Shown: positions 15,959 to 63,610 of the stretch, one piece after another | How positions within the stretch are numbered: position 1 is the first letter of the stretch | How the letters are laid out: each line of letters begins with the position of its first letter | IMG/VR virus record: IMGVR_UViG_3300048438_000153 | Coordinates: 211,103 to 275,102 of that record | Reading direction: 5' to 3' (one strand) | DNA: 64,000 bases | Notes under the pieces: generated by a model | Databases searched by the model: none | What the model saw: the letters and a program-made list of their open reading frames with translations, nothing else | What the model was told of the DNA's origin: nothing | Made by a program: the position numbers and the translations under genes

Positions 15959-18900
15959 AGGATCACAAAGTTGATCGTGATCACACTGTCTGCGTTAATC
16001 TGAGAACCTATCCTGTTGACAAGGCTGAACTCGAAGCTCGTAGCGTTCGTGATCGAATGCGCGTATACCTCGATACCGCCCTCAGCGAGAATGTCTCCTC
16101 CATTATCAGCAGAGGCCACTGTAGCCATGATGACGCTTGTAGATAACACTGAAGTGTTATTGACCACAAATCCGATTGAGTGAGCATCATCTGCTATCGC
16201 GGTATCGGTTGTCACCGCGACTTGGAAAGCCTTAGTGTTGGTGCTAAAGAGAGGCGCGTTAGTCACGCCCTCGTCACCTGTAAGACCTGTAGTCTTAGCG
16301 ACTGTAAGACCACCGTTCTTGACATTCAAGCTACCTACGTCAAGGGGAGCGAGATCTGAGTCAGGAACGGAATAAGATGCAGCCGGCTCAGTTATGTCAG
16401 CTCGACCATGAAAAATCTTAAACGCGCCTGACTTACCGCCTACGGTGTTGTCTACCTCATATACGACACCCATAAGGAAGTCAGCAAAGTTAGAATCACC
16501 GTAAGCACCTACAAAACCGAGATCGCGAGTTGATGCTGTATTAGTGTAGCCCACATATAGGGTAGGGTCTTTGAATCTTAAAGACCCTGAAACCGCGCTG
16601 TTTCCTGTGATCACACCTGTGACATCAAGATCGCCCGAGAGAGTCACTTTCTGATCTGCTGTCAGAGTGATCGTAGTCTCTCCGTCTGAGTTCTGAATGA
16701 CGTTATTCCCAAGAATAAGGTTACTGCCTGTCTCTACCTCGCCCGTAAACGTAGCCTTGTTTGCAGAGCTAAGAGTCAGAACAGTTGAAAGAGCACCCGC
16801 ATTATCTCCACCTGTCTGAAAGATAACCGAACCGCCTGTGCCTGTCCCATTACCAACACCCGAGGAAATAGTGAGGTTCTCACCTACGGTGTCTTCGTCA
16901 GTCTGAGTAGTCACAGAAATAGAGGTCGCGTTGCTTCCATCACCTAGAGCTACACCTCCACCGCTAACAGTAAGACTGTTCGATGTGAGTGACCCTGTAG
17001 TTGAAAGGTTCTCATCTCCGAAAGAAATAACCCCCCCCGAGTCGGTAATAGAACCGTCAGCAAGAGTAAGAGTTCCAACAGATGAGCCTGAGACTCCCTC
17101 AGACACTTTCCCGAAGACTACTTTCTCACCTTCATTCGTGGTGACGAACTTGAGGTAAGAGTTAGCTCCCTCTGCGATGTCGAGAGCAGTCGCCTGAGCA
17201 TCCGTAAGACTGATAGAAATGGTATTTCCATCGGCGGAGATACTATCTAGGGAGATATCGCCTACGTTAGTGATGTCTCCATCAGCAACACTTAACGAGG
17301 TAACAGTGGTTGCGCCCGCTCCGAGAGTTCCCGTAGTTGAGAGGTTCTCATCTCCAAAGGAAATAGCTCCGCTTGAGTCAGTAATAGAGCCGTCAGCGAG
17401 AGTAAGAGTTCCAACTGTCGAGCCTGAGACTCCCTCAGAAACCTTTCCGAAGACTACCTTCTCACCAGCGTCAGTTGTTACGAACTTGAGGTAAGAGTTA
17501 ACACCCTCTGTGATATCAAGTGATGATGCTTGGTTATCAGTGAGGTTAAGGGTGATCGCGTTTCCGTCAGCAGAAATACTATCGAGAGCAATATCCCCTA
17601 CGTTAGTGATGTCCCCATCAGTAACACTTAACGAGGTAACAGTGGCAGACCCCGCCCCGAGAGTACCTGTAGTAGAAAGGTTCTCGTTCCCAAAGGAAAT
17701 CGCGCCCCCTGAGTCGGTGATCGACCCGTCAGCGAGAGTAAGAGTTCCAACTGTCGAGCCTGAGACTCCCTCAGAAACCTTCCCGAAGACTACCTTCTCA
17801 TCAGCGTCAGTGGTGACGAACTTGAGGTAAGAGTTAGCTCCCTCAGTAATGTCGAGTGAAGACGCTTGGTTATCAGTGAGGTTAAGGGTGATCGAGTTCC
17901 CGTCAGCAGAAATACTATCGAGAGCAATATCCCCTACGTTGCTGATGTCTCCATCAGCAACACTTAATGAAGTGACAGTGGTTGCGCCCGCCCCGAGAGT
18001 ACCTGTAGTAGAAAGGTTTTCGTCCCCAAAGGAAACAGCGCCCCCTGAGTCAGTAATCGAGCCATCAGCGAGAGTAAGAGTTCCAACAGACGATCCTGAG
18101 ACTCCCTCAGACACCTTCCCGAAAACTACCTTCTCATCAGCGTCTGTAGTTACGAACTTGAGGTAAGAGTTAGCTCCCTCAGTAATGTCGAGTGAAGACG
18201 CTTGGTTATCAGTGAGACTGATGGAAATGGTATTTCCGTCAGCAGAAATACTATCTAGGGCGATGTCCCCTACGTTGGAGATGTCCCCATCAGTAACACT
18301 TAATGAAGTGACAGTGGTAGCTCCCGCGCCGAGAGTACCTGTTGTCGAGAGGTTCTCGTCCCCGAAAGAAATAGCTCCACTTGAGTCAGTGATCGACCCA
18401 TCAGCAAGAGTAAGATCTCCAAAGGTAGATCCTGTTGCTCCCGAGACTGTGCCTGTAGCCTCAAGAGTGCTGACAAGTAAACCAGCCTTAGAAAGACCCA
18501 CAACACCTGAGAAGTCGGTAGTAGTTCCATTTACCGCACCGCTGTGAGTGCCTAGTAAGAATTTACCTTCACCCTCATCCCAAATGATAAGAGCATCGTC
18601 CTCAAGACCTCTATTCAGGAAGATCCCGATATCAGAGTTATTGTTATTATCCCCAATGTCCTTGTTGAGCTCAATCACTTGATCTGCAACAGAAAGGTTG
18701 GTTGTACTGATGATAGTCTGAGTGCCGTTTACGGTAATGTTCGTACAGGTGATAGAACCTGTAGTGGTCAGGTTCTCATCATCAAAAGTGATTGTCCCAC
18801 CTGTGGAGGTAATAGAACCGTCAGCGAGAGTAAGAGTCCCTACGGTAGACCCTGAAGCAAGTGTAGCCACCCCCGCTCCGAGAGTACCTGTGGTAGAAAG

Positions 18901-21369
18901 GTTCTCATCCCCGAAAGAAATCGAACCACCTGAGTCAGTGATCGAACCATCGGCAATAGTAAGAGTTCCAACAGACGATCCTGAGACTCCCTCAGAAACC
19001 TTCCCGAAGACTACCTTCTCATCAGCGTCAGTTGTTACGAACTTGAGGTAAGAGTTAGCTCCCTCAGTGATGTCGAGAGCAGTCGCCTGAGCATCTGTTA
19101 AAGAGATGGTGAGGGTGTCTCCATCGGCGGAGATACTATCGAGGGCGATATCCCCTACATTCGTGATGTCCCCATCAGTAACACTTAACGAGGTAACAGT
19201 GGTTGCGCCCGATCCGAGAGTTCCCGTAGTTGAGAGGTTCTCATCTCCAAAGGAAATCGCGCCCCCTGAGTCAGTAATCGAGCCATCAGCGAGAGTAAGA
19301 TTTCCAACAGACGATCCTGAGACTCCCTCAGAAACCTTCCCGAAGACTACCTTCTCATCAGCGTCAGTTGTTACGAACTTGAGGTAAGAGTTAACACCCT
19401 CAGTGATGTCGAGAGCCGTTGCTTGAGCATCCGTAAGACTGATAGAAATGGTATTCCCATCAGCAGAAATACTATCAAGGGCGACATCACCTACGTTAGT
19501 GATATTTCCGTCAGTAACACTTAATGAAGTGACAGTGGCAGACCCCACTCCGAGAGTTCCCGTAGTTGAGAGGTTCTCGTTCCCGAAAGAAATAGCTCCA
19601 CCTGAGTCAGTAATAGAGCCGTCAGCGAGAGTGAGAGTTCCTACGGTAGACCCTGAGACTCCCTCAGACACTTTCCCGAAGACTACCTTCTCACCTTCAT
19701 TCGTGGTGACGAAGTTAAGGTAAGAGTTACCCGCTTCTGTGATATTGAGCGCGGTAGCTTCGTTATCCGTCAAAGTGATGGTGAGGGCACTGCCGTCAGC
19801 AGAAATGCTGTCGAGGGCGATATCCCCTACGTTAGTGATATTTCCGTCAGTAACACTTAATGAAGTGACAGTGGTAGCCCCCGCGCCGAGAGTACCTGTT
19901 GTCGAGAGGTTCTCGTTCCCAAAGGAAATAGCGCCCCCTGAGTCGGTAATCGACCCGTCAGCGAGAGTAAGAGTTCCTACGGTAGATCCTGAAGCAAGTG
20001 TGGCTACCCCCGCGCCGAGAGTTCCCGTAGTTGAGAGGTTTTCGTTCCCGAAAGAAATAGCTCCACCTGAGTCAGTAATCGACCCGTCAGCGAGAGTAAG
20101 AGTTCCTACGGTAGACCCTGAGACTCCCTCAGAAACCTTTCCGAAGACCACTTTCTCACCTGCGTCAGTTGTTACGAACTTGAGGTAAGAGTTAACACCC
20201 TCAGTAATGTCGAGTGAAGACTCTTGGTTGTCTGTAAGGCTGATAGAAATGGCATTTCCGTCAGCAGAAATGCTATCTAGGGAGATATCGCCTACATTCG
20301 TGATATTTCCGTCAGTAACACTTAATGAAGTGACAGTGGTTGCTCCAGCTCCGAGAGTACCTGAAGTTGAGAGGTTCTCATCCCCGAAAGAAATCGAACC
20401 GCCTGAGTCAGTAATCGAGCCATCAGCGAGAGTAAGAGTTCCAACTGTCGAGCCTGAAGCAAGTGTAGCCACACCCGCTCCGAGAGTTCCCGTAGTTGAG
20501 AGGTTCTCATCCCCGAAAGAAATCGCCCCACCTGAGTCAGTGATCGACCCGTCAGCGAGAGTAAGAGTCCCTACGGCAGACCCTGAGACACTCTCAAATA
20601 CTTTCCCGAAGACCACTTTCTCACCCTCGTCAGTTGTTACGAACTTGAGGTAAGAGTTAGCTCCCTCAGTAATGTCAAGAGACGACGCTTGATTGTCCGT
20701 AAGACTAATAGAAATGGTGTTGTTATCGGCGGAGATACTATCTAGGGCGATGTCCCCCACGTTAGTGATGTTTCCTTCGTTAACATTAAGAGATCCAAGA
20801 GAGAGAGTCCCTGATGTAAAGTCAGCGTTCCAAGAGTTGTCATTCTCGGTCACGTCAGCAGTACCTAGAGCGAAATAGTTGTTCTCTTCATCGAAATAGA
20901 AAACGCCAGGGTTCTGAGCCCCACCACCCTCTCCATCAGTCTGAAGTGGTCGTGTGAAGATGATGCCGATGGAGTCTCCGTTTGTTCCATTCGCATCGTG
21001 GGCGTTACCCTCACTCCCATCAGCCAAGACGATAACTCTATCCTGAACGAGAAGATCATTCGTAGTATTCTGAGTGGTTACGTTAAGTGTCCCAGGAATA
21101 GAAATGATCGAGTTGGCTTGACCTAATGTGATCGTGTTGGCTCCAAGAGTAGGACCAATCACGATTGATCCTGTCACCCCTATGTTTGAGGTGATTGAAG
21201 CATTGTTAGACATATCGGCGCGAAGAAGGTCTGCGCCTCCCGCATCTGCGCCGTTGTGGACGCGGATAGACTCAGTAGTGGTATCTACCGTGACCTCACC
21301 GATTGCGCCCGTAAAGGCATTGTTCTCAGCAGTAGTGCCTCTGCGTAATTGTACTCTTCTTACAGCCAT
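15955..21369 (-). CDS. Tail fibre/adhesin with an Mtd_N-like N-terminus and 112-aa tandem repeats
   Basis: VQLRRGTTAENNAFTGAIGEVTVDTT N-terminus; nine copies of the YL(K/N)FVTT...TLADGSITDSGG unit. Confidence 0.85.
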   Translation of the reverse strand: MAVRRVQLRRGTTAENNAFTGAIGEVTVDTTTESIRVHNGADAGGADLLRADMSNNASITSNIGVTGSIVIGPTLGANTITLGQANSIISIPGTLNVTTQNTTNDLLVQDRVIVLADGSEGNAHDANGTNGDSIGIIFTRPLQTDGEGGGAQNPGVFYFDEENNYFALGTADVTENDNSWNADFTSGTLSLGSLNVNEGNITNVGDIALDSISADNNTISISLTDNQASSLDITEGANSYLKFVTTDEGEKVVFGKVFESVSGSAVGTLTLADGSITDSGGAISFGDENLSTTGTLGAGVATLASGSTVGTLTLADGSITDSGGSISFGDENLSTSGTLGAGATTVTSLSVTDGNITNVGDISLDSISADGNAISISLTDNQESSLDITEGVNSYLKFVTTDAGEKVVFGKVSEGVSGSTVGTLTLADGSITDSGGAISFGNENLSTTGTLGAGVATLASGSTVGTLTLADGSITDSGGAISFGNENLSTTGTLGAGATTVTSLSVTDGNITNVGDIALDSISADGSALTITLTDNEATALNITEAGNSYLNFVTTNEGEKVVFGKVSEGVSGSTVGTLTLADGSITDSGGAISFGNENLSTTGTLGVGSATVTSLSVTDGNITNVGDVALDSISADGNTISISLTDAQATALDITEGVNSYLKFVTTDADEKVVFGKVSEGVSGSSVGNLTLADGSITDSGGAISFGDENLSTTGTLGSGATTVTSLSVTDGDITNVGDIALDSISADGDTLTISLTDAQATALDITEGANSYLKFVTTDADEKVVFGKVSEGVSGSSVGTLTIADGSITDSGGSISFGDENLSTTGTLGAGVATLASGSTVGTLTLADGSITSTGGTITFDDENLTTTGSITCTNITVNGTQTIISTTNLSVADQVIELNKDIGDNNNNSDIGIFLNRGLEDDALIIWDEGEGKFLLGTHSGAVNGTTTDFSGVVGLSKAGLLVSTLEATGTVSGATGSTFGDLTLADGSITDSSGAISFGDENLSTTGTLGAGATTVTSLSVTDGDISNVGDIALDSISADGNTISISLTDNQASSLDITEGANSYLKFVTTDADEKVVFGKVSEGVSGSSVGTLTLADGSITDSGGAVSFGDENLSTTGTLGAGATTVTSLSVADGDISNVGDIALDSISADGNSITLNLTDNQASSLDITEGANSYLKFVTTDADEKVVFGKVSEGVSGSTVGTLTLADGSITDSGGAISFGNENLSTTGTLGAGSATVTSLSVTDGDITNVGDIALDSISADGNAITLNLTDNQASSLDITEGVNSYLKFVTTDAGEKVVFGKVSEGVSGSTVGTLTLADGSITDSSGAISFGDENLSTTGTLGAGATTVTSLSVADGDITNVGDISLDSISADGNTISISLTDAQATALDIAEGANSYLKFVTTNEGEKVVFGKVSEGVSGSSVGTLTLADGSITDSGGVISFGDENLSTTGSLTSNSLTVSGGGVALGDGSNATSISVTTQTDEDTVGENLTISSGVGNGTGTGGSVIFQTGGDNAGALSTVLTLSSANKATFTGEVETGSNLILGNNVIQNSDGETTITLTADQKVTLSGDLDVTGVITGNSAVSGSLRFKDPTLYVGYTNTASTRDLGFVGAYGDSNFADFLMGVVYEVDNTVGGKSGAFKIFHGRADITEPAASYSVPDSDLAPLDVGSLNVKNGGLTVAKTTGLTGDEGVTNAPLFSTNTKAFQVAVTTDTAIADDAHSIGFVVNNTSVLSTSVIMATVASADNGGDILAEGGIEVYAHSITNATSFEFSLVNRIGSQINADSVITINFVIL
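16980..20780 (-). repeat. Nine coding repeats with a 336-bp core unit and optional 129-bp insert
   Basis: Equivalent positions at 17158, 17494, 17830, 18166, 19051, 19387, 19723, 20188, 20653 (spacings 336, 336, 336, 885, 336, 336, 465, 465). Confidence 0.9.
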
Positions 21370-21430: not shown

Positions 21431-24400
21431 CTAAACCACTAAGACCCCGTAGTCGTCAGCGCAGTAGAGTACCGTGTCAGCCACCGAGCCGAAATCAATG
21501 TTAAAGTCACCCTCCCCGAAAGCGTCGGCTACCGAGCCGTAGTCGATGACTTCCATGACTCGACCATAGATTACGAGGTCGCCTCCAACGAGAGCGTTCG
21601 GGTTCAGAGAAATACTCTGAGACGTAATCACAGGACTCTCGTTAACGTCTGTACCTATAGTTGGAACAGTACCCGGCTCAAATCTACTGTTGTTGGCGTT
21701 GTAGACAAGACCCTGACCATCGGCCAAATCAGTCAAGTCAACATCGGAGTGCGTTTCAACTGAGCCCAAGACGGTAAGATTTGAGCCATCTAACGCCCCT
21801 AACTTACCTTCTCCATCTGTAACAACCGCCTTGCCGTTCTCACCACCTCCGCCATTAATAGTAGTGTCGAGTGTAGAAGCAGAGCCGAGTCCTAAGTTGC
21901 CTCTCGCTACCGCTTCATTTCCCCCATCAGAAATCTCAGAAAGACTGTTGCCGACCTGAAGCAAGTCTGAAATGTCTGTAGTCGCTGTTGAAGTAAGACC
22001 GAGAGTAGACCTAGCTGTCGCGGAATCCGCGTCATCCAAAAGTGTTCTCGCAAAGGCTGTTACATCAGCCTCAGCCCAAGTATCTACTCCTGTAGTATAT
22101 ATGAGCTTATCAGCGCCCGTCCCGAGATCAGAAATAGCACTCAAGGTGGCGTCAAAAGCTTGGACGTCAGTGTCGATCTCTAACCCAAGAGTAGTTCGAG
22201 CCGTCGCTGAGTCAGCGTCATCTAAGAGTGTCCTAGAGAAAGCAGAAAGGGTGGCTTCAGCCCAAGTATCTACTCCCGTAGTATATATGAGCTTGTTAGC
22301 GCCTGTCCCGAGATCAGAAATACTCTGAAGAGTAGCATCGTAGGCTTGGACGTCAGTGTCGATCTCTAACCCAAGAGTAGTTCGAGCCGTCGCTGAGTTA
22401 GCGTCATCTAAGAGAGATCTAGCGAACGCCGTAAAGATGGTGATTGAGAAAGTATCTACGCCACTTGCATAAATGAGTCTATCAGCGCCCGTATTAACAC
22501 CAGCTAAAGCTTGTAATGTAGCATCATAAGCCTGAACATCAGAGCCGATCTCAACACCTAAGTTACCCCTCGCATTCGCGACGTTATCTAAGTCATTAAG
22601 ATTATTAGCTGACTGAAGAAGATTGCCAATGTCTGTTGTGGCTGTCGAAGTGAGGCCGAGGGTAGTTCTCGCTGTGTTAGCATCAGCATCGTCTAAGAGT
22701 GTTCTAGAGAAAGCAGAAAGGGTGGCCTCAGCCCAAGTGTCTACTCCCGTAGTGTAAGCGAGCTTATCAGCCCCCGTTCCGAGCGCGGAGAGAGAAGCTA
22801 ACGTCGCATCGTAGGCTTGAATATCAGTGTCGATCTCTAACCCAAGAGTAGTTCGAGCGGTCGCTGAGTTAGCATCGTCTAAGAGTGTCCTAGAGAAAGC
22901 AGAAAGGGTGGCTTCAGCCCAAGTGTCTACTCCCGTAGTATATATGAGCTTATCAGCTCCCGTCCCGAGATCAGAAATAGCACTCAAGGTGGCGTCAAAA
23001 GCTTGAACGTCAGACCCGATAGCGACACCGAGATTAGCCCTCGCATTCGCGACGTTATCTAAGTCATTAAGATTGTTAGCTGACAGAAGAAGATCAGCGA
23101 GGTCTGTTGTCGCAGTAGGGGTAAGACCGAGGGTCGCTCTAGCATCTGCTGAGTTAGCGTCATCTAAGATTGTTCTAGCGAAAGCAGAAAGAGTTGCTTC
23201 AGCCCAAGTATCCAATCCCGTAGTATATATGAGCTTATCAGCTCCCGTTCCGAGATCAGAAATAGCACTCAAGGTGCTGTCGAGAGGCTGATAAGTGTTT
23301 GCGAGATCCAAGTCTGTGATCTCTGCTTGAACATAAGCAGTAGTGGCGACGAGAGTTGAATCATCACCGAGATCAGGGCTTTCCACTCTTAATGGAGAAA
23401 GAGTCAGGTTGGCGTCATTAAACTCTGTGGCGGTGTGGGCATCAGTGGTCGTGCCTAGCTTGAACGTGTCTGTGCTCTCGTCAAAAAAGAACACCGCGTC
23501 ATTTCCCGTAGTCCCACGCTCGAAGAAAAGACCGATGTCATTGGGGTTAGCTCCGCCATCAACGCCTTTATTAAGTCTGACAATCGTATCTTCTACATCT
23601 AGTGTAGAAGTGTTGACTGTTGTCGTGTCGCCCTGAACTTGAAGATCACCACTTACGATAACCTTCGACCCAACACCTCCGAGCGTTAAGACTGAAGGGT
23701 TGCCATTATTGGTAGTCATCGTCGCGCCGATTGTTGCATCTGCGTTGGTGAAGTCGATTCCTGTCATGCCACTAAGAGTTGTGGAAGCCCCTCCCAAAGA
23801 AATGGATGTTGAACCTACAGTCAAAGAGCTGTTCGCGAGCTTATCGTTCGTGACGTCTCCATCAACAATCTTAGCAGTCGTAACAGAGTCGGCATCGAGC
23901 TTCGCCTCAGTGACGTTCCCATCTACGATTTTAGCCGTAGTAACGGAGTCAGCGTCGAGCTTCGCTTCAGTGATGTTGCCGTTCAAAATCTTAGCGGTGG
24001 TTACAGCATCGTTACTTATGGTAGCCAAGCCCTCGTTGGAGATAGAAACATCACCCGAGAGAGATACGTTCTTCCATTGATTGTCGTCCGCACCCCCATC
24101 GGAGTCGTAGACGATAATCTGAGCGTCTGCGACGTCGGCGAGGAGGACATCGTTGAGGTCATCGAGGCTAGAGACGTTGCCTGCTGCTTGCATGACGTCA
24201 TTGACCCACTCAGTAGTCGCTACTGTAGTGTCATCAGAGGCGAGGTCAGGAGTTGCTGAAGTAAGAGTACCCACCTCAAAGTTATATGCGAAAGCCCCGA
24301 AAGTAGTAGCTCTTGTGGTGAGCGCGATGCTTGCGTTGTCTGAGAGGTTAGACGTAGAAATCGTCTGATTCGCAAAACCACCATTTCCTGTACTCACTAA

Positions 24401-26929
24401 GAAATGGTTAGCGTTGACGAGTTCATCTCCATCCAAAGACACATCAGAAAGAGCGTCGATCCTCGCAGTGCTTCTCAAGAAGTTCTCTACTCCAAGCTGA
24501 ATGCTGACCTTCTCGAAAGAATCAGCTCCATTACCTAAGAGTAAATCACCGTCAGCGATCCCTGTAATGGTATCGAGAGAAGCATCTTTGGCTTGGTATG
24601 TGTTGGCGAGGTCGAGCGCAGTTATGTCTGCATCAATCGCGTCATCTACGTATTTCTTAGTGGAGGCGTGGGCATCAAGAGTAGGATCTTGGACACTGAC
24701 AGTAGAAAGCGTGAAATCGTAAGCGAAAGCCCCGAAGGTAGCTCCCACGCTCGTCTGAACTACATTACCTGTGTTAGAGAGGTCGCCGAAAGAAAGAATG
24801 CTGTTCTCAAAGGTTGAGTCATCCGCTCCGATTCTTAGGACCTGACCCTCGGCCTTCACACCGATTGTAGTGTCAGAAAGATTGTCTGAAGCTCCCACGC
24901 TCTTGAGGAAAGACTCTACGCCCTCTGTGACACTGACCTTCTCGAAAGAGTCAACGCCATTACCTAAGAGTAAATCACCGTCAGCGATCCCTGTGATGCC
25001 ATCAAGAGAAGCATCTTTAGCTTGATACGTATTGGCGAGGTCGAGCGCAGTTATGTCTGTGTCAATCTGAGCGTCTACATAGGCCGTAGTAGCGAGCTTC
25101 GTTGAGTTGTCGCTTGCGTTCTGAGTGGTAGCCGTAGCGTTCGCGCCTGTAAGGTCTACATCAGCAGTAAAGGTGTTATTCGCGGAGAAAGTCTGAACGG
25201 CATTGAGCCGAGCGACATTAGCGGTGTCTGTGAGGTCTGTAGAAGCAATGCTCACTGTCGCTGTGACTGTGCCGTCATTCACCCCCTCTGTGTCGTCATA
25301 AGAGAAAGTGATCCCTGTGTTACCCACGTTGTTTGCGGTGAACATTGGGCCGACTATATCTTGGACTTGCTCATCAGAAAGCTGAGTATCCGTATCTGTT
25401 TCGTCAGCGACCTCGAAAGACCCATTGTTATACTTAAGAATCTTTCCGTCAACGACACCTACGAGATCGACATCAGAAAGATCACCAGCAGAGAACCCCC
25501 CAAGACTTACAGTTGCGTCTATCGTGTCTGCGTTATCGTTAGGGGAGAAAGAAACACCTGTGTGAGCTCCACCTTGTAGAGCTGTGCCAACAGCGTCCCT
25601 TGCCATTTCGTCTGTGTAAGTCTGAGTAGGAGCTGTAAACTCAAATCGGTTGTTCCCCGCCACCCAAGCGAGGACGTTTCCGTCTTGAATGTTCGCAATC
25701 GAGTTGACGTCAGAAAGATCAGAGATGGAAGCACCTGAAGCGAGAAAGTCCCCTACATTACTCTGAGAAGCAGTGCCAAGAGCGAGCGCGAGGATGTCTG
25801 TGTCAATCTGAGCGTCTACATAAGCAGTGGTGGCGAGTTTCGTTGAGTTGTCGCTTGCGTTCTGAGTGGTGGCTAATACTGTTCCTGTGAAAGTCTGATT
25901 GGCGCTGAGGAGAGCGACATCTCCTGTCCCTGACAGCTCAGAGAAATCAAGATCTTCGTTAATCCAAGCGCCGTTCTCGTACTTCAAGACTTGGCTATTA
26001 GCGAGCCCCACTCCGCCAAGTGTGACGTTAGAAAGGTTTCCGATCTCAGCGTCAGTGCTTAAGAAAGACTCTAAGTCAGCACTGATGTTGATGACGCCAA
26101 AAGTGTCGTTTCCTGTAGCGATGATCAGGTCATTGTCTACAGGAGCGAGCGCGGATAAACCTGTCAAAGTCGCGTCGAGAGACTGTTTTGTAGCCACCTC
26201 GTCATCAACGTATTTCTTAGTCGATGCGTGGGCATCAAGAGTAGGATCTTGAACACTCACTGTAGAAAGAGTGAAGTCGTAAGCGAAAGCGCCGAAAGTA
26301 GACCCTGAGCTAGTCAAGACAACATCGGCGGAGTCTGAAAGCTCGGATGTTGATATCGTCTGATTCGCGAAGTTGTTTCCGTCAAAAACAAGGAACTCAT
26401 TGAGCGCGGGGTTCGCGACAGAAGCATCTCCGAGATCATTCAGATTAGCTGCGCCACCACCGCCACCTTGACCTGGTACCCACTGACCCACGTTCGCATC
26501 ATAGACTAAGGCGTTTCCGTCAACTAGACCTACTAGATTTACGTCAGAAATCAAGCTCAGAGTAAGGGTCGCGTTTTCCCATTTCCCAGCTCCCACGTTG
26601 TACTGAAGAAACTGATCATCAGCGAGTCCCGCTATCGTCACGTCAGATAGCTGAGCGAGTTGAGCGTTCCCCCCTAAGACTGCGTTTCCTACAACATCTT
26701 GGACGAACTCTGTGGTGGCGATGCGACCTGAACTCTCATTAAGTGGGATGCCACCTAAGATACTTAAAGTCCAATCACCTCCTGACCCTAGAATATAGCC
26801 TGATTGGTTGATGGAGGGTCCGGGTACAAGCCCGTCAGTACCCGCTTGCGCTCCATCTGTTCCTGTGAAAGCGGTCAAAACAATCGAAGAACCGCCCGTT
26901 GTGGTCGTGCCTGTGCCGAAAGAACTCAT
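21431..26929 (-). CDS. Long tail fibre/structural protein with several repeat types
   Basis: ATTAYVD, LSDLSDV and TLLDDA..ATARTTLGL fibre motifs; likely start ATG 26929 after AAGGAG. Confidence 0.85.
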   Translation of the reverse strand: MSSFGTGTTTTGGSSIVLTAFTGTDGAQAGTDGLVPGPSINQSGYILGSGGDWTLSILGGIPLNESSGRIATTEFVQDVVGNAVLGGNAQLAQLSDVTIAGLADDQFLQYNVGAGKWENATLTLSLISDVNLVGLVDGNALVYDANVGQWVPGQGGGGGAANLNDLGDASVANPALNEFLVFDGNNFANQTISTSELSDSADVVLTSSGSTFGAFAYDFTLSTVSVQDPTLDAHASTKKYVDDEVATKQSLDATLTGLSALAPVDNDLIIATGNDTFGVINISADLESFLSTDAEIGNLSNVTLGGVGLANSQVLKYENGAWINEDLDFSELSGTGDVALLSANQTFTGTVLATTQNASDNSTKLATTAYVDAQIDTDILALALGTASQSNVGDFLASGASISDLSDVNSIANIQDGNVLAWVAGNNRFEFTAPTQTYTDEMARDAVGTALQGGAHTGVSFSPNDNADTIDATVSLGGFSAGDLSDVDLVGVVDGKILKYNNGSFEVADETDTDTQLSDEQVQDIVGPMFTANNVGNTGITFSYDDTEGVNDGTVTATVSIASTDLTDTANVARLNAVQTFSANNTFTADVDLTGANATATTQNASDNSTKLATTAYVDAQIDTDITALDLANTYQAKDASLDGITGIADGDLLLGNGVDSFEKVSVTEGVESFLKSVGASDNLSDTTIGVKAEGQVLRIGADDSTFENSILSFGDLSNTGNVVQTSVGATFGAFAYDFTLSTVSVQDPTLDAHASTKKYVDDAIDADITALDLANTYQAKDASLDTITGIADGDLLLGNGADSFEKVSIQLGVENFLRSTARIDALSDVSLDGDELVNANHFLVSTGNGGFANQTISTSNLSDNASIALTTRATTFGAFAYNFEVGTLTSATPDLASDDTTVATTEWVNDVMQAAGNVSSLDDLNDVLLADVADAQIIVYDSDGGADDNQWKNVSLSGDVSISNEGLATISNDAVTTAKILNGNITEAKLDADSVTTAKIVDGNVTEAKLDADSVTTAKIVDGDVTNDKLANSSLTVGSTSISLGGASTTLSGMTGIDFTNADATIGATMTTNNGNPSVLTLGGVGSKVIVSGDLQVQGDTTTVNTSTLDVEDTIVRLNKGVDGGANPNDIGLFFERGTTGNDAVFFFDESTDTFKLGTTTDAHTATEFNDANLTLSPLRVESPDLGDDSTLVATTAYVQAEITDLDLANTYQPLDSTLSAISDLGTGADKLIYTTGLDTWAEATLSAFARTILDDANSADARATLGLTPTATTDLADLLLSANNLNDLDNVANARANLGVAIGSDVQAFDATLSAISDLGTGADKLIYTTGVDTWAEATLSAFSRTLLDDANSATARTTLGLEIDTDIQAYDATLASLSALGTGADKLAYTTGVDTWAEATLSAFSRTLLDDADANTARTTLGLTSTATTDIGNLLQSANNLNDLDNVANARGNLGVEIGSDVQAYDATLQALAGVNTGADRLIYASGVDTFSITIFTAFARSLLDDANSATARTTLGLEIDTDVQAYDATLQSISDLGTGANKLIYTTGVDTWAEATLSAFSRTLLDDADSATARTTLGLEIDTDVQAFDATLSAISDLGTGADKLIYTTGVDTWAEADVTAFARTLLDDADSATARSTLGLTSTATTDISDLLQVGNSLSEISDGGNEAVARGNLGLGSASTLDTTINGGGGENGKAVVTDGEGKLGALDGSNLTVLGSVETHSDVDLTDLADGQGLVYNANNSRFEPGTVPTIGTDVNESPVITSQSISLNPNALVGGDLVIYGRVMEVIDYGSVADAFGEGDFNIDFGSVADTVLYCADDYGVLVV
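21990..23290 (-). repeat. About six copies of a ~62-aa coding repeat (DATLSAISDLGTGADKLIYTTGVDTWAEATLSAFSRTLLDDA...)
   Basis: Visible in both protein and DNA (186-bp spacing at 22201/22387). Confidence 0.85.
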
Positions 26930-26938
26930 ATCGAACTC

Positions 26939-26984
26939 CTTTATATGTCTCTCTTCTTTCTCCAAGAGACATATAAAGACTTAA
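26939..26984 (-). promoter_or_regulatory. 14-bp perfect hairpin overlapping a near-consensus late promoter and the RBS of the fibre gene
   Basis: CTTTATATGTCTCT (26939-26952) / AGAGACATATAAAG (26965-26978); TTAAGTCTTTAT at 26973-26984. Confidence 0.7.
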
Positions 26985-27000
26985 TCAACCAAGACCGAGA

Positions 27001-27110
27001 AGGAGAAGACTACAAAGTGGATAAGGTTATCTGTGTGATAGACCGCACCGATGCTTTGAAAGAGGTTCTTTCTTCTGAAGGCATAGGCTATGAGAGCTTG
27101 ATTAAAGCCT
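27001..27110 (+). pseudogene. C-terminal remnant of an orotate phosphoribosyltransferase-like gene
   Basis: YKVDKVICVIDRTDALKEVLSSEGIGYESLI resembles the PyrE C-terminus; no PRPP-binding loop upstream. Confidence 0.45.
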
Positions 27111-27235
27111 CCCCGTTTCCTCGCGCAAAGAGAAAGGGTGAAAACCTTTACGCTACGAACGGTATTACGCCCCCAAAACTCGCTGACACCCTTCTTCTTC
27201 GCTTTTTTAAGAGAATGGGGGGACGAGGGAGAGGG

Positions 27236-27739
27236 TCACACCTTTACGAAGAAAGAAAGATTACCTGTGTTTCGGTCGGACTCTTTGTGGAAAGAGTTAC
27301 CCTTAGCCAAGAGACCTCTATCTACGCAGACCTTAAAAGATTTCTTAAAGTCCTCGATAGCGGAGGCTCGTTCCTCTTTCATGCGCTCTTTGAGAGAGAT
27401 GTCAAAGTTAAAGGCTTCGATCTCTAGGCACTCTTTGGTCGCTTTAGAAACCGAGTGGAGCGATGTCTTTCTTAAGTAATGGCGAACTTCTACAGAAGAG
27501 AAACCAACTACAGTCAGACAGATCAAGCCCTTATTGACAGTAAGGGTTTCGATATCCAAAGTGAGCGCCGACAAGCACTTGCGAAGGTACTTCTCCGCTT
27601 CAACACTAGCTATCTCTACGCACTGTTCTCTTAAGTCACCGAAAAAGTCGATGCGTAAGCTCTCTTCACTAGGAAGGTAAGTCGAAGAGAGTCCTCTTTT
27701 AGAAAACTCTTTCTTAACTTGAGTTATTGTGGGATTCAT
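27236..27739 (-). CDS. Hypothetical protein
   Basis: ORF with AAGGA RBS before ATG 27739 and a late motif 45 nt upstream. Confidence 0.65.
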   Translation of the reverse strand: MNPTITQVKKEFSKRGLSSTYLPSEESLRIDFFGDLREQCVEIASVEAEKYLRKCLSALTLDIETLTVNKGLICLTVVGFSSVEVRHYLRKTSLHSVSKATKECLEIEAFNFDISLKERMKEERASAIEDFKKSFKVCVDRGLLAKGNSFHKESDRNTGNLSFFVKV

Positions 27740-27783
27740 TTCTATGTCCTTTTCTCTGAAGTTCATCTCACACACAGTGTTAG

Positions 27784-27795
27784 ATAAATAAACTA
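27784..27795 (-). promoter_or_regulatory. Putative late promoter TA-N5-TTTAT (TAGTTTATTTAT)
   Basis: 45 nt upstream of ATG 27739. Confidence 0.55.
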
Positions 27796-27842
27796 TCCCT
27801 AAGAAGAAAGAGGTCTTTGATCATAGGGAATGAGAGCGACGC

Positions 27843-28256
27843 CTACACGATAACATCGTACTTGACGTCTCCTGTAAAAGCCGTCGATAACTCAACTACA
27901 AACCCTGTGGTAGACTTACTCTTGGCTCGCGCAAAAACGAAGTCTCCCACGAAAAAGAGGACTCGATAGTTAATGTTGGGCATAGGGGAGTCAAAGAAAA
28001 CGCTAGCTTCAGATTGGTTCGCAAAAGTAACCGTACCGCTCAGGGTAGAAATGTTAGACATGATAACCTCCAAGTTTGAAATAGCATCACTGATCGCTCT
28101 TTGAACCTCTACAGGGTAAGACCCTAAGAAAGCTATATTGTCTTTAGTGACGCTTGATACGGAAATAGACCCGTACTTGTTAGCCGACACAGAGAACTTG
28201 AATAGCCCCTGAGTAGACGGGTAAGAGTAAGAAAGAGTAGTTTCTTGCAGTATCAT
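27843..28256 (-). CDS. Small structural protein with an H-type-lectin-like C-terminal domain
   Basis: SGTVTF...VFFDSPMPNINYRV...KSTTGFVVEL pattern. Confidence 0.55.
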   Translation of the reverse strand: MILQETTLSYSYPSTQGLFKFSVSANKYGSISVSSVTKDNIAFLGSYPVEVQRAISDAISNLEVIMSNISTLSGTVTFANQSEASVFFDSPMPNINYRVLFFVGDFVFARAKSKSTTGFVVELSTAFTGDVKYDVIV

Positions 28257-28257
28257 T

Positions 28258-28506
28258 TCAGCACTCCTCTACAAAGTAACCTTTGCTCTTGAGATAAGCC
28301 ATTAAAGAGACAATCTTATAGGGGTCATTTGACGTGACTACGAGCTTGTTCTCTTTGAGCGAACACTCCCACTCCTCTTTCTCTTTAAGGGTTCTAAGAA
28401 ACCTCTCAGAGAACTCTCCATACTGAGGGTGGACGGTCACAGAGTATTCTTTCTTAATAATTCTCTCTAACCACTTATCTGCTACTTTCTTGCTGATAAT
28501 GCTCAC
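28258..28506 (-). CDS. Hypothetical protein (MSIISKKVADKWL leader)
   Basis: GTG start overlapping the upstream TGA (GTGA); the longer track ORF is an overlap extension. Confidence 0.6.
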   Translation of the reverse strand: MSIISKKVADKWLERIIKKEYSVTVHPQYGEFSERFLRTLKEKEEWECSLKENKLVVTSNDPYKIVSLMAYLKSKGYFVEEC

Positions 28507-29072
28507 AGAAGAACTCGCCTTACTTCCTGACCCCCCCCTGTCTTTCTTAGGAGGGTGAGGTTTGAGTTGACTGTGCTTAGAGCTAGGTGGATCTCTTTCA
28601 AGTCCTCGATCTTTTCTAGTGCGCTGAGACATCTTAGAAACCTATACCTTACTTTCCCTTGAGACTCTCCGATTTCCCTAGCCGCATGGCTTTGACTAGA
28701 GTAGAGATAAAGAAGTATCATTACTCTTATATCCTTCTTATCAGAAAAGTACCGAGAAAGATTATCTTGTAAGTATGCTTCTGTGAAGACAGGTATCGTG
28801 AGCAATACTCTGAGTCTATCCATAGCCCGATTCACACGATAGTGTATGTTCGGCTGAGTGTACCCGAATATCTTACCGAGAGATGATTGAGGCACACCTT
28901 TCAAGACGTGAAGCTCGATCATATCAGCCTCCACAGGGCTAATCCGACCCATGTGGTCGAGGACACACTCAAGCCTCTCTAAAGTCTCCTCGCTTGATTC
29001 TTCTGAGTACGTTGGGAAGTTCGACATTGAGTGCTCATTAGAGAAGATTCTCTCCATGATGTGGCTATCCAT
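28503..29072 (-). CDS. Sigma-70 region-4-like tandem HTH protein (candidate phage sigma factor or regulator)
   Basis: ISPVEADMIELHVLKGVPQSSLGKIFGYTQPNIHYRVNRAMDRLR and a second HTH SQSHAAREIGESQGKVRYR. Confidence 0.65.
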   Translation of the reverse strand: MDSHIMERIFSNEHSMSNFPTYSEESSEETLERLECVLDHMGRISPVEADMIELHVLKGVPQSSLGKIFGYTQPNIHYRVNRAMDRLRVLLTIPVFTEAYLQDNLSRYFSDKKDIRVMILLYLYSSQSHAAREIGESQGKVRYRFLRCLSALEKIEDLKEIHLALSTVNSNLTLLRKTGGGQEVRRVLL

Positions 29073-29601
29073 TAGAATCTCCTACTGAGAAAGAATCCAC
29101 TGTGAGAATCACTTCCGCGCTCCTCAGAGTGATCAATATCGAGTACCGTCCACCCTCAAACTCGCTTTCTTTTTCCAAGATATCGAGGACAATCCCTACG
29201 CACCCTTTAAAGTCACCCCCCGTGATTTCAACCTCATCCCCCAATCGGTAGTTCCCACCACGACTGTAAGCCTCAGAGATCATCTTTCTTAAGTCGGACT
29301 CGCTTATCGTTCCTTGAGATATCATGTCGCTTCGGGTGTCGTATTGACTGATCATGCTGTCTATGTAAACAGACCTCGCTAAGTCATAATACTTAGCTGA
29401 GGGATAGCCAGACTTGACGAAGATATACCCTTCTATAAGAAAGGTCGCTTTTGAAGAACCTCCTCTTAAGATCGGTATGTAGATGTCTTCAAGGCTTACC
29501 TCAGCTAAGTCTTTCAGCCGTTGCGCTAAAAGTCCTAGCTTAGCTTCTTCCTCCCCCTTCGGCGATGTTTGCATCACCACCCAAGTCGATCTCTTTCTCA
29601 T
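29065..29601 (-). CDS. nusG: NusG/RfaH-family transcription elongation factor
   Basis: NGN (WVVM...IYIP...LIEGYIFV) and KOW (GDEVEITGGDFKGCVGIV). Confidence 0.85.
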   Translation of the reverse strand: MRKRSTWVVMQTSPKGEEEAKLGLLAQRLKDLAEVSLEDIYIPILRGGSSKATFLIEGYIFVKSGYPSAKYYDLARSVYIDSMISQYDTRSDMISQGTISESDLRKMISEAYSRGGNYRLGDEVEITGGDFKGCVGIVLDILEKESEFEGGRYSILITLRSAEVILTVDSFSVGDSNG

Positions 29602-30850
29602 CTACACTCCCTCTGTAAGAGTTTGATCTCTCTATTATTCTCTTTACCCATTTCGAGAATAACATCAATGAAACTTCCTCTTCTTTCTCGCTAGTTTCTT
29701 TATCCGAAGGTGCGTTTTTTGCGTTTTCGGGGGCTGTGTCCAAAGAAGCGACCGCAGACTCTTCCGTAGAAGGGGCGACCGCCTCTATCTTAACTCCCCT
29801 AAATCGAAGCCACTTCAAGAGTTCACACTTGAACAGCGCCTCTGTAGAACGGCGCGGTTTTGAAGAGATTGCTTCTGCTAAGAAAATGAGCTTGTCTCCA
29901 TTCTTCTCCCAAGCCTGAGAAAGAACATCTTTGTTCCAATAAGGAGGAGGGTTGCCCACGCCCATACCCAAGCTGATCGCAAGCATCGTGGCTGATAAGA
30001 GCCTGTCGAAAGCCACCCCCACAGGAGTGCTCGAAAGAACCTCATCGGATATTCTTAGAGCTTCTTTTTCATCGCTCACCAAGAGCTTGCAGATGAGGTC
30101 ATTCCTGTCTACATGAAGATAAGAGCGAACCGCCTCTAGTGACACACTCTTAGAGTTCGATGAAGCAACTCCCTCAACTCCCTTGAGCGCGTCTCGGATG
30201 TGACCCTCAGTGAAGTCTGCGATGAGTATGAGAGCTTCTCTTTCGTATGAGAAACCCTCCTGATCACAGACCACAGCAAGCCTACTTGCGATCTCTTCAG
30301 AATCGACATGGTGGATGATAAAGGCGGGAGCGCATCGAGAAAGAACTGTGGCTCTCATCTTCTCGGGCTCTGTAGTACAGAAGATGCAAACGAGCCTCTT
30401 CTCTTCAGACCCTTTGCGATTGTCCTCCATAGGCTTTAAGAGAGCGTCGAGGGCGCTAGGGGAGAGCTGATGCGACTCGTCAAAGAGGTAGAGCTTACGC
30501 CTACCTGAGAAAGCACTGTAGTCCAACTCTTCGAGGATTTTCTTAACGTCAGCTTTACCGCTGTTGGTGGCTGCGTCCACTTCGACAAAAGCGTCACTCC
30601 CTCCCTCAAGCATACCCTTGCAAGATGAACACTCGTCACAGGGGTTTCCCTCGCTTGGGTTCTCACATAAAAGAGCGCGAGCTAGGATTCTCCCTAGCGT
30701 CGTTTTCCCTGATCCGAACGGGCCTGCGAACAGGTAAGACTGCTTCCACCCCGCTCCTTCCGAGACGATTCCTCTTAAGGTCTTGACCGCACCTGATTGA
30801 CCCAACACATCTTCATAGGTGCGAGGTCTATACTTTGTATCTAAGCTCAT
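29540..30850 (-). CDS. dnaX: DNA polymerase III gamma/tau clamp-loader ATPase
   Basis: KYRPRTYEDVLGQ, GPFGSGKTT, C...PCDECSSC zinc module, DESH, TVLSRC, GHIRDAL. Confidence 0.95.
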   Translation of the reverse strand: MSLDTKYRPRTYEDVLGQSGAVKTLRGIVSEGAGWKQSYLFAGPFGSGKTTLGRILARALLCENPSEGNPCDECSSCKGMLEGGSDAFVEVDAATNSGKADVKKILEELDYSAFSGRRKLYLFDESHQLSPSALDALLKPMEDNRKGSEEKRLVCIFCTTEPEKMRATVLSRCAPAFIIHHVDSEEIASRLAVVCDQEGFSYEREALILIADFTEGHIRDALKGVEGVASSNSKSVSLEAVRSYLHVDRNDLICKLLVSDEKEALRISDEVLSSTPVGVAFDRLLSATMLAISLGMGVGNPPPYWNKDVLSQAWEKNGDKLIFLAEAISSKPRRSTEALFKCELLKWLRFRGVKIEAVAPSTEESAVASLDTAPENAKNAPSDKETSEKEEEVSLMLFSKWVKRIIERSNSYRGSVDEKEIDLGGDANIAEGGGRS

Positions 30851-47614: not shown

Positions 47615-47666
47615 AAAGGGGGGCTTGCTAGGCATTTCTAAAAGACCACCCAACAAGCCCCCCTTT
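47615..47666. terminator. Bidirectional terminator-like inverted repeat between convergent genes
   Basis: AAAGGGGGGCTTG ... CAAGCCCCCCTTT. Confidence 0.65.
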
Positions 47667-59445: not shown

Positions 59446-59493
59446 AAAAAAGCGCGGTGTAAAGTGCCGAATATCAACACTTTACACCGCGCT
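59446..59493 (-). terminator. Intrinsic terminator
   Basis: 16-bp perfect stem AGCGCGGTGTAAAGTG/CACTTTACACCGCGCT, extended by G-U pairs on the minus strand, followed by a U-tract. Confidence 0.8.
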
Positions 59494-63563: not shown

Positions 63564-63610
63564 AACCACCCCACATGACCTCCGAGCGCCAACCTGAGCC
63601 GACCTCTAGT

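What the first reader, a model, noticed from the sequence alone, without database searches (positions are those of the whole stretch)
26929..26984. T4-style translational lock: hairpin joining a late promoter to the RBS of a tail fibre gene
Seen: on the minus strand, ttaagtCTTTATATGTCTCT-tggagaaagaag-AGAGACATATAAAG-gagttcgatATG. The 5' arm overlaps the TTTAT promoter motif and the 3' arm covers the AAG of the AAGGAG Shine-Dalgarno. Established: T4 e, soc, 49 and I-TevI are silenced on read-through transcripts by such hairpins and are translated only from late transcripts that start inside the stem. Inference: the same logic operates here, which independently supports TTTAT as a promoter.
Basis: partly seen in the sequence, partly recalled or inferred. 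Interest (0 to 1): 0.65.

Follow-up and report, generated by a model that had tools for sequence, protein, structure and literature searches.

The report
Promoter-to-ribosome-site hairpin before tail fibre gene
A perfect 14-bp hairpin really does join a conserved promoter-like motif to the ribosome-binding site of a tail fibre gene in an uncultured marine jumbo phage, and it is one of about two dozen such leader hairpins in this phage lineage, most simply read as a phage T4-style device that lets a gene be translated only from its own promoter's transcripts.

Summary
On the minus strand, arms 26978-26965 and 26952-26939 are 14/14 complementary with a 12-nt loop. TTTAT lies in the 5' arm, AAG(G) of AAGGAG in the 3' arm, and ATG at 26929. 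The gene encodes a 1832-aa tail fibre protein.

The window is the end of a 275-kb seawater phage record. TTTAT is the core of an oriented motif (TTwATAGTTTnTTTATa) found 35-68 nt upstream of 43 genes here and 98 genes in a 375-kb relative.

Supporting evidence:
- Pairing between the motif region and the gene's own ribosome site far exceeds shuffled promoter/gene combinations in both genomes.
- Two orthologous genes keep such stems with unrelated sequences.
- Strong hairpins occur in 24/85 motif genes with a co-directional upstream gene, against 2/56 with a divergent one. That is what a read-through lock predicts.

Limits:
- No start site is mapped and no RNA data exist.
- "Late" is unproven, because the motif also precedes RNR-beta and UvrD-like genes.
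- The subject's match outside TTTAT is weak.
- Only part of the SD is paired.

Verdict: a new member of the known T4-type lock, unusually widespread in this lineage. Confidence about 0.55.

The parts
26964..26979 (-). 5' arm of the leader hairpin (perfect part 26978-26965, CTTTATATGTCTCT; one G.U pair at each end in RNA)
26973..26977 (-). TTTAT, invariant core of the class-A promoter-like motif (consensus TTwATAGTTTnTTTATa), 48 nt before the ATG. Flank match here is weak (T at -7, -10 and -11, A at -8)
26970..26975 (-). TATATG, which matches the core of the second (class-B) upstream motif seen before replication genes. It overlaps TTTAT inside the 5' arm
26953..26964 (-). 12-nt purine-rich loop (TGGAGAAAGAAG); 10 nt if the inner G.U pair forms
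26938..26953 (-). 3' arm (perfect part 26952-26939, AGAGACATATAAAG); it covers the first 3-4 nt of the SD
26936..26941 (-). Shine-Dalgarno AAGGAG, 6 nt before the ATG. The context ATAAAGGAG is conserved in orthologous leaders L004 and L005 (ACAAAGGAG in L006)
26985..26989 (-). Outer helix, 5' side (GUUGA). It pairs with 26934-26930 (UCGAU, just before the AUG) and exists only in RNA that begins upstream of the promoter motif
21431..26929 (-). Tail fibre gene, 1832 aa, start ATG 26929-26927
26985..27235 (-). About 250 nt with no minus-strand ORF between the upstream gene and the hairpin; no intrinsic terminator predicted, so read-through is possible
27017..27427 (+). Antisense ORFan (136 aa from GTG 27017; 160 aa if from ATG 26945, which lies inside the palindrome). 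Coding-like hexamer score but no homologues; its 3' end overlaps the convergent gene 27236-27775. Status uncertain
27236..27739 (-). Upstream co-directional gene (167 aa, unknown function) with its own class-A site (TTTAT at 27788). It is a possible source of read-through RNA. Further upstream lie sigma-r4-like, NusG/KOW-like and clamp-loader genes, the last behind a class-B motif

Best explanation
The inverted repeat encodes an RNA leader hairpin that makes translation of the tail fibre gene depend on where the transcript starts.

RNA that reads through from the upstream co-directional genes carries both arms. The 16-bp stem, plus an outer helix reaching the AUG, buries the start of the SD and the ribosome landing zone.

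RNA initiated at the promoter-like element lying in the 5' arm (TTTAT, overlapping TATATG) lacks some or all of that arm, so the SD is free.

Shown:
- the hairpin and its geometry;
- that TTTAT is the core of a conserved, oriented upstream motif;
- that motif-to-SD hairpins are a selected, recurrent feature of this phage lineage and are concentrated downstream of co-directional genes.

Inferred:
- that the motif is a promoter;
- that initiation occurs downstream of position 26974 or so;
- that read-through RNA exists;
- that the stem lowers translation.

The temporal label 'late' is not established. The device may insulate each gene's translation from upstream transcription, rather than strictly separating early from late expression.
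For: 1. Structure. 14/14 arms; -23.7 kcal/mol; z = -3.4.

2. Motif.
- TTTAT peaks at -60 to -41 from start codons in the sense orientation only: 42 hits in 20 nt against about 1-7 per 10-nt bin elsewhere.
- The logo has T(-7) in 40/47 sites and A(-6) in 30/47.
- The 375,691-bp relative G001 (173 reciprocal best hits, mean 52% aa identity) has the same motif before 98 genes, with a stronger logo.
- A matrix built from G001 flanks alone picks G000 sites: 18 of the top 23 lie 35-68 nt before a start codon.
- The motif is about 2x enriched at directon-first genes (G001 p = 0.003; G000 p = 0.053), as expected of a promoter and not of an RNA-processing site.
- Tail fibre orthologues L004, L005 and L006 keep TTTATA 45-46 nt before the ATG.

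3. Hairpins are selected.
- Pairing of the segment -4..+16 with the gene's own TIR: 7/43 at -15 kcal/mol or stronger, against 0.48 expected from all other promoter/TIR combinations (0 of 20,000 permutations reached the observed mean). The subject ranks fifth at -21.2.
- G001: 15/98 against 0.71 expected.
- Stems of -18 kcal/mol or stronger occur in 24% of motif genes against 2.7% of controls in G000, and 13% against 2% in G001.

4. Conservation with full sequence turnover.
- The baseplate gene (-34 and -28.5 kcal/mol) and the RNR-beta gene (-17.6 and -25.9) keep TTTAT-to-SD stems in both phages with unrelated stem sequences.
- Leader-hairpin energies of 113 orthologue pairs correlate (rho = 0.39, p = 2e-5).

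5. Prediction specific to a read-through lock. Strong hairpins occur in 24/85 motif genes with a co-directional upstream gene, against 2/56 with a divergent one (odds ratio 10.6, p = 1.2e-4).

6. Read-through is possible. No minus-strand terminator is predicted between 31874 and 26980.

7. Energetics for the subject.
- Cost to open the SD hexamer: 6.0-6.2 kcal/mol in read-through RNA, 3.3-3.7 with a 5' end at +3..+7, and 0.8-1.0 at +11 or beyond.
- Leader MFE: -25 for RNA beginning at the stem base (26978), falling to about -11 for a 5' end at +11 or beyond.

8. The precedent is documented (PMC3014915).
Against: - No TSS, no RNA-seq and no host: all 20 holder runs are DNA metagenomes.
- The gene-specific part of the 5' arms in the family lies mostly at +5..+21 after TTTAT, and many stems start at +1..+5. 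If initiation were at the A of TTTAT or just after, those hairpins would sit intact at the 5' end of the promoter's own transcripts.
- For the subject, a 5' end at +3..+7 leaves a 7-11-bp 5' hairpin, and the SD then pairs with codons 1-4 instead, giving only partial relief.
- The subject's flank match to the motif is weak.
- Only 3-4 SD nucleotides are in the stem.
- Orthologue L005 has no stable leader structure (z = +1.4).
- The G.U versus A.C mismatch test for RNA-level, sense-strand selection was null, 7 against 7.
- No phage RNAP and no sigma region 2 were found that could be assigned to the motif.
- Short intergenic spacers (41-73 nt in most co-directional cases) force any intercistronic hairpin to overlap both the motif and the SD. 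That confounds the co-directional enrichment, although the subject (306-nt gap) and four others (85-183 nt) are free of this problem.
Confidence: 0.55

Rival explanations
1. Intrinsic leader hairpin. Transcription starts at or just upstream of the stem base (around the TAT of TTTAT), so the hairpin is the 5' end of the gene's own mRNA. It would act as a 5'-terminal stabiliser against 5'-end-dependent RNases. It could also be a constitutive translational brake that needs melting by a factor, in the way phage Mu Com opens the mom leader.
For: In the strongest family members the 5' arm starts in a narrow zone, -5 to +5 around TTTAT. The gene-specific pairing signal is at +5..+21. If TAGTTT at -7..-2 is read as a -10 hexamer (T, A and final T being the conserved positions), +1 falls at about +5. 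With a 5' end at +3..+7 the subject keeps a 7-11-bp terminal hairpin.
Against: It does not predict the tenfold excess of hairpins behind co-directional genes over directon-first genes. About nine strong stems, including the subject, start at -5..-2 and so would lose their base. A stabiliser has no need to reach the SD across loops of 12-28 nt. SD positions -12..-8 are the most often paired.
Confidence: 0.17
2. Intercistronic RNA element of polycistronic transcripts. It would be a processing site (RNase III type, as between T7 genes) or a 3'-end protective hairpin for the upstream message. It could also be a structure that enforces translational coupling, with SD overlap a by-product of short spacers.
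For: Hairpins are concentrated between co-directional genes with 41-73-nt spacers. Stems of 14-22 bp are near the size RNase III accepts (my own knowledge). No terminators are predicted in the locus.
Against: The subject lies 306 nt from the upstream stop codon and still runs exactly from TTTAT to the SD. There is no upstream ORF to couple to. The stem is 14-16 bp, shorter than the roughly two helical turns typical of RNase III sites. The motif itself behaves as a promoter, being enriched at directon starts.
Confidence: 0.13
3. DNA-level palindrome. It would be an operator for a dimeric regulator, a cruciform, or a shared control element of a divergent pair formed by the tail fibre gene and the plus-strand ORFan 27017-27427 (or 26945-27427, whose ATG lies in the palindrome).
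For: The symmetry is perfect. Both strands read CTTTATATGTCTCT. The plus-strand ORF has a coding-like hexamer score of 0.32, above the 99th percentile (0.20) of antisense open frames, and a gene caller called it. The G.U/A.C test gave no evidence for strand-specific RNA selection. Tail fibre orthologues in L004 and L006 have a divergent neighbour.
Against: The sequence is unique in the genome. Sister hairpins at other genes all have different sequences, so no single DNA-binding protein can explain the family. The plus-strand copy scores -1.0 bits on the motif matrix. The ORFan has no homologue anywhere, including G001, and would overlap the convergent gene by 190 nt.
Confidence: 0.08
4. Chance complementarity between a pyrimidine-rich promoter region and a purine-rich SD region.
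For: cTCTTTAT is naturally complementary to ATAAAGAG/ATAAGGAG. Shuffled promoter/TIR combinations already average -7 kcal/mol.
Against: 14 perfect pairs (about 0.01 expected per window, my estimate). The subject's -21.2 kcal/mol lies far in the tail of the control distribution, where only 1.1% reach -15. Eight of the 14 pairs (ATGTCTCT/AGAGACAT) lie outside both the motif and the SD.
Confidence: 0.02

Closest known systems
Phage T4 translational locks at genes e (lysozyme), soc, 49 and I-TevI (PMC3014915)
   Same: A stem-loop sequesters the SD and/or AUG. [quoted passage not shown] Long read-through transcripts would be silent and short ones translatable. The same arrangement recurs in relatives with diverged sequence.
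   Different: The promoter motif is TTwATAGTTTnTTTATa, not TATAAATA. No gp55-type factor is identified. Usage is genome-wide, with 24 strong cases behind co-directional genes in two genomes, rather than a handful. The motif is not restricted to late or structural genes. Only part of the SD is paired at the subject. Nothing has been shown experimentally.
Phage Mu mom leader opened by Com (own knowledge, not checked here)
   Same: A leader hairpin hides the translation start of a late phage gene.
   Different: Relief there is by a trans-acting RNA-binding protein, not by promoter choice. No such factor is identified here.
T7 intercistronic RNase III sites (own knowledge)
   Same: Structure-conserved, sequence-variable hairpins lie between co-directional phage genes, just upstream of ribosome sites.
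   Different: T7 sites are longer, with internal loops, and are not built on a promoter motif. The subject is 306 nt from the upstream gene.
phiKZ late promoters (TATG with G as +1; PMC4666361)
   Same: The subject's 5' arm contains TATG (26973-26970). A start at that G would remove most of the 5' arm.
   Different: No multisubunit phage RNAP genes were detected. The conserved motif here is much longer and lies upstream of TATG. In this genome TATG is part of the class-B motif seen before replication genes.

Membership tests
T4-type promoter-in-hairpin translational lock | Leader stem-loop sequesters the Shine-Dalgarno sequence and/or the start codon | tested here: met
   A 16-bp stem covers AAGG of AAGGAG, and an outer helix reaches the nucleotides before the AUG. 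Opening the SD costs about 6 kcal/mol in long RNA. The coverage of the SD is partial.
T4-type promoter-in-hairpin translational lock | A promoter lies within the DNA encoding the 5' strand, so its transcripts lack that strand | tested here: inconclusive
   The TTTAT core of a conserved, oriented, position-specific motif lies in the 5' arm. Promoter function and the TSS are inferred, not measured, and the flank match at this site is weak.
T4-type promoter-in-hairpin translational lock | Longer transcripts from upstream promoters run through the leader | not testable with these tools
   No RNA runs hold the sequence. Indirect evidence: no terminator is predicted upstream, and hairpins are concentrated behind co-directional genes (24/85 against 2/56).
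T4-type promoter-in-hairpin translational lock | Long transcripts are poorly translated and short ones well translated | not testable with these tools
   Only thermodynamic modelling is available: SD opening cost falls from 6.0 to 0.8-1.0 kcal/mol for 5' ends at +11 or beyond.
T4 late promoter (gp55-dependent) | TATAAATA consensus about 6 nt upstream of +1 | tested here: not met
   The motif here is TTwATAGTTTnTTTATa. No sigma region 2 was found in the genome.
Intrinsic (rho-independent) terminator | G+C-rich stem followed by a U run | tested here: not met
   No terminator-like site in 26000-29000. The stem is A/U-rich and is followed by GGAGUUCG.
Any curated RNA family (Rfam 15) | Covariance-model score at or above the gathering threshold | tested here: not met
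   Only chance-level hits to generic hairpin (miRNA precursor) models, 18-20 bits against thresholds of 82-95.
RNase III processing site (T7 type) | About two helical turns of dsRNA between cistrons, cleaved by RNase III | tested here: inconclusive
   The stem is 14-16 bp, on the short side. It lies between co-directional genes but 306 nt from the upstream stop. Cleavage is not testable here.

The most novel reading that the evidence does not exclude
In this uncultured marine jumbo-phage lineage the promoter-in-hairpin lock is a genome-wide design principle rather than a curiosity of a few genes. Roughly a quarter to two fifths of class-A promoters embedded in co-directional, terminator-poor gene arrays are built into SD-sequestering hairpins. 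Each gene's translation is then licensed only by firing of its own promoter and is insulated from read-through. The class-B (replication-gene) promoters show the same trend, with the anti-SD just upstream of the element.
Probability: 0.35. Interest if true: 0.65.

Novelty: new member of a known kind. Interest (0 to 1): 0.5.

Why it matters
If the model holds, it extends a regulatory trick known from four T4 genes to an unrelated, uncultivated group of 275-375-kb marine phages, where it is used at dozens of genes. That would suggest a general way for large phages with few terminators to uncouple translation from read-through transcription.

It also gives two practical handles for annotating these genomes. 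One is a 17-nt promoter-like motif with a fixed distance to start codons. The other is a structural signature that marks true translation starts.

It yields directly testable predictions: TSS positions, and long versus short leader translation.

Tried and rejected
- **RNA evidence.** The one run search found 20 holders, all seawater or marine DNA metagenomes and none RNA, so no 5' ends could be read.
- **Population variation.** Contigs of four runs laid on 25500-29000 show 27 variable positions but none inside 26938-26979. That is uninformative, since about 0.3 would be expected.
- **Wobble asymmetry.** G.U versus A.C mismatches in gapless stems were 7 against 7, or 4 against 4 after removing mirrored divergent pairs. 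This gives no evidence for or against RNA-level selection.
- **Plus-strand ORF.** No PHROG or Pfam family. The only database match is its own gene call. No match in G001 by blastp or tblastn. It is left as uncertain.
- **Phage RNAP and sigma.** PF00562, PF00940 and PF04542 found nothing in the genome (the PF00940 control was silent everywhere). Giant ORFs gave no RNAP hit. Only a weak sigma region-4 match at 28503-29072.
- **Trivial inverted repeats.** Some 'hairpins' with arms at -30..-10 are merely the antisense of a divergent neighbour's SD/ATG (for example the G001 tail fibre and its neighbour). These were excluded from the key tests.
- **More distant relative.** A 41-kb stretch of LR745208.1 (about 51-56% aa identity in clamp loader and helicase) has no TTTAT upstream motif.
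- **Other searches.** megablast against phage records found no match. Rfam gave nothing above threshold. No terminator was predicted.
Full report
**1. The observation**

The minus strand of the window reads exactly as quoted.
- The arms are 26978-26965 and 26952-26939. They are 14 nt, perfectly complementary, and 12 nt apart.
- In RNA a G.U pair at each end gives a 16-bp stem.
- An outer helix (26989-26985 with 26934-26930) reaches the bases just before the AUG.
- The 76-nt leader folds at -23.7 kcal/mol, z = -3.4, and none of 200 shuffles is as stable.
- TTTAT is at 26977-26973, AAGGAG at 26941-26936 and ATG at 26929-26927.
- The arm sequence occurs nowhere else in the genome.
- Only eight inverted repeats of this class occur in the 64 kb, and several of the others look like bidirectional terminators.

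**2. Context**

The window is the last 64 kb of a 275,102-bp IMG/VR virus record, 88% complete, 47.5% G+C. It is present in many seawater metagenomes.

It has no close cultured relative. The nearest GenBank record is an unannotated 485-kb uncultured phage.

Genes around the hairpin:
- ORF 21431-26929 is a tail fibre protein (PHROG tail fibre families, best E = 8e-56). The next giant gene, 15955-21369, carries an Mtd_N domain.
- Upstream on the same strand lie a 167-aa gene (27236-27739) and small ORFs.
- Further upstream are a weak sigma region-4 match (28503-29072), a NusG/KOW-like ORF (29065-29601) and a DnaX-type clamp loader (29540-30850).
- Between 27235 and 26985 the minus strand has no ORF.
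- The plus strand has an ORFan, 27017-27427 as called by a gene caller, or from ATG 26945 inside the palindrome. Its hexamer score is coding-like but it has no homologue anywhere.
- No terminator is predicted on the minus strand between 31874 and the hairpin.

**3. Is TTTAT a promoter-like motif?**

Within this genome:
- TTTAT is sharply enriched 41-60 nt upstream of start codons, in the sense orientation only.
- Aligned sites show T at -7 (40/47) and A at -6 (30/47).

In the relative G001, which I fetched whole (375,691 bp, complete; 173 reciprocal best hits at a mean 52% aa identity):
- The same motif precedes 98 genes, with the clearer consensus TTwATAGTTTnTTTATa.
- A matrix built only from G001 flanks finds the G000 sites. 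18 of the 23 best-scoring TTTAT occurrences lie 35-68 nt before a start codon.

Further points:
- The motif is about twice as frequent at directon-first genes as at internal genes (G001 p = 0.003; G000 p = 0.053). That fits a promoter and not an RNA-processing signal.
- Tail fibre orthologues in three other contigs keep TTTATA 45-46 nt before the ATG.

Two other upstream motif classes exist:
- A roughly 45-nt element lies before small genes at both contig ends and is probably early.
- A short class-B motif lies 35-50 nt before the helicase, exonuclease and clamp-loader genes. It reads TTcT[G/T]ATAT[G/A] here and tCATATAA in G001.

Class-A genes include baseplate and tail fibre genes. They also include the RNR small subunit and a UvrD-like helicase. 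'Late' is therefore not established.

The subject site itself matches the extended motif weakly (1.15 bits; rank 53 of 427). It also contains TATATG, the class-B core.

**4. The hairpin is one of a family**

I paired the motif-proximal segment (-4..+16) with each gene's own translation initiation region (-24..+3). I compared this with all other promoter/TIR combinations, which controls for the pyrimidine-rich against purine-rich composition.

| Genome | Genes at -15 kcal/mol or stronger | Expected from controls | Permutations reaching the observed mean |
|---|---|---|---|
| G000 | 7 of 43 | 0.48 | 0 of 20,000 |
| G001 | 15 of 98 | 0.71 | 0 of 20,000 |

The subject ranks fifth in G000 at -21.2 kcal/mol.

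Sister cases have arms built on the same cTCTTTAT / ATAAAGAG complementarity, extended by gene-specific sequence. Examples are the genes starting at genome positions 191497 and 201271 and at window position 4838.

Stems of -18 kcal/mol or stronger:

| Genome | Motif genes | Their controls | Other genes | Their controls |
|---|---|---|---|---|
| G000 | 24% | 2.7% | 8.4% | 5.0% |
| G001 | 13% | 2.0% | 5.2% | 1.9% |

Class-B promoters show the same tendency, with the anti-SD just upstream of the element.

**5. Conservation**

- The baseplate-wedge gene has a 19-22-bp stem running from TTTAT to the AUG in both phages, with unrelated stem sequences.
- The RNR-beta gene likewise.
- Across 113 orthologue pairs with aligned N-termini, leader-hairpin energies correlate (rho = 0.39, p = 2e-5).
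- For the tail fibre gene itself conservation is partial. L004 and L006 have SD-sequestering folds (-11.9 and -18.2 kcal/mol). These are formed partly with the antisense of a divergent neighbour's SD. L005 has no stable fold.

**6. Which mechanism?**

The decisive comparison I could make concerns gene context:
- Strong hairpins (5' arm within -5..+22 of the motif) occur in 24 of 85 class-A genes whose upstream neighbour is co-directional.
- They occur in only 2 of 56 whose upstream neighbour is divergent (odds ratio 10.6, p = 1.2e-4).

A lock against read-through RNA predicts exactly this. A 5'-terminal stabiliser, or any hairpin intrinsic to the promoter's own transcript, does not.

Intercistronic functions (processing, 3' protection, coupling) would also predict it. 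Most spacers are so short (41-73 nt) that any hairpin must touch both the motif and the SD. The subject (306-nt gap) and four others (85-183 nt) escape that confound.

The main weakness is the unknown TSS. Many family stems begin at +1..+5, and their gene-specific part lies at +5..+21.
- If +1 is about 6-9 nt after TTTATA, as for T4 late or -10-type elements (PMC3014915 and my own knowledge), the 5' arms are largely untranscribed and the lock model holds for all of them.
- If +1 is at the A of TTTAT, which is possible if TAGTTT is the -10 hexamer, many hairpins would persist in their own mRNAs.

For the subject, modelling gives the following:

| 5' end of the RNA | Cost to open the SD hexamer (kcal/mol) | Leader MFE (kcal/mol) |
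|---|---|---|
| Read-through RNA (starting 60-120 nt upstream) | 6.0-6.2 | -35.5 to -56.2 (longer RNAs, not comparable) |
| At the stem base, -1 (26978) | 6.1 | -25.2 |
| +3..+7 | 3.3-3.7 | -21.4 to -17.3 |
| +11 or beyond | 0.8-1.0 | about -11 |

- With a 5' end at +3..+7 the SD re-pairs with codons 1-4.

Any start downstream of 26978 therefore relieves the SD at least partly, and a start at 26966 or beyond relieves it almost completely.

**7. Comparison with the known**

The arrangement is the one described for T4 e, soc, 49 and I-TevI (PMC3014915). It has inhibitory helices over the SD/AUG and a promoter in the region encoding the 5' strand.

It is not a T4 late promoter: the consensus differs and no gp55-like factor was found. 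It matches no Rfam family and is not a terminator.

phiKZ late promoters start at the G of TATG (PMC4666361). The subject contains TATG at 26973-26970, but no phage RNAP genes were detected.

**8. Verdict**

The finding is real and is most likely a T4-type translational lock (confidence about 0.55). It is a new member of a known kind.

The added points of interest are a new promoter-like motif and unusually broad use across two large marine phage genomes.

Rivals:
- an intrinsic 5' leader hairpin (0.17);
- an intercistronic RNA element (0.13);
- a DNA-level palindrome linked to the antisense ORFan (0.08);
- chance (0.02).

Noticed in passing
window 55738, 58725, 59427, 62308, 63056 (minus strand); also genome 4.6-8.7 kb and 24.2 kb: A roughly 45-nt conserved element (core TTGAGGTATTGGTGAGGTAaCAGG.TTGGG..TAAGAGTAA) lies 40-300 nt upstream of small genes at both ends of the contig. 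It is probably the early promoter class of this phage and is distinct from the TTTAT class.
   Followed up: partly
window 30850, 42446 and 1701 upstream regions; genome 84583, 86248, 96190: A second short upstream motif, TTcT[G/T]ATAT[G/A] (tCATATAA in relative G001), lies 35-50 nt before the clamp-loader, exonuclease and DNA-helicase genes. It may be a replication-gene promoter class. It also tends to have an anti-SD just upstream.
   Followed up: partly
window 28503-29072, 29065-29601, 29540-30850 (minus strand): A cluster of a weak sigma-70 region-4-like ORF, a NusG/KOW-like ORF and a DnaX-type clamp loader lies just upstream of the tail fibre locus. It is a candidate phage transcription-factor module, reminiscent of the T4 link between clamp and late transcription.
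   Followed up: no
window 27017-27427 (+), or from 26945: An antisense ORFan sits in the gap upstream of the tail fibre gene. It overlaps the 3' end of the convergent gene 27236-27775 by 190 nt. Its hexamer score is coding-like, it has no homologues, and one low-depth contig has a 2-nt deletion at 27003.
   Followed up: partly
window 25794-26301: In metagenome contigs the tail fibre gene breaks into alternative sequences here, with several loose ends and clustered substitutions at 25826-25838 and 26252-26270. This suggests a hypervariable or mosaic segment among co-occurring strains. The neighbouring giant gene has an Mtd_N domain.
   Followed up: no
window 9491-9895 (+) and 15503-15958 (+): Small plus-strand ORFs are wedged between the giant minus-strand genes (1737, 1804 and 1832 aa), the same layout as the ORFan at 27017-27427. 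They have no family hits.
   Followed up: no
window 47615-47666, 52459-52513, 59451-59493, 63608-63658: These are long, G+C-richer inverted repeats. They look like bidirectional terminators and are structurally unlike the A/U-rich leader hairpins.
   Followed up: no
window 27135-27172 (+): A sub-threshold Rfam hit to TLS-PK6 (25.5 bits against a gathering score of 44, E = 0.01). It is most likely chance.
   Followed up: no
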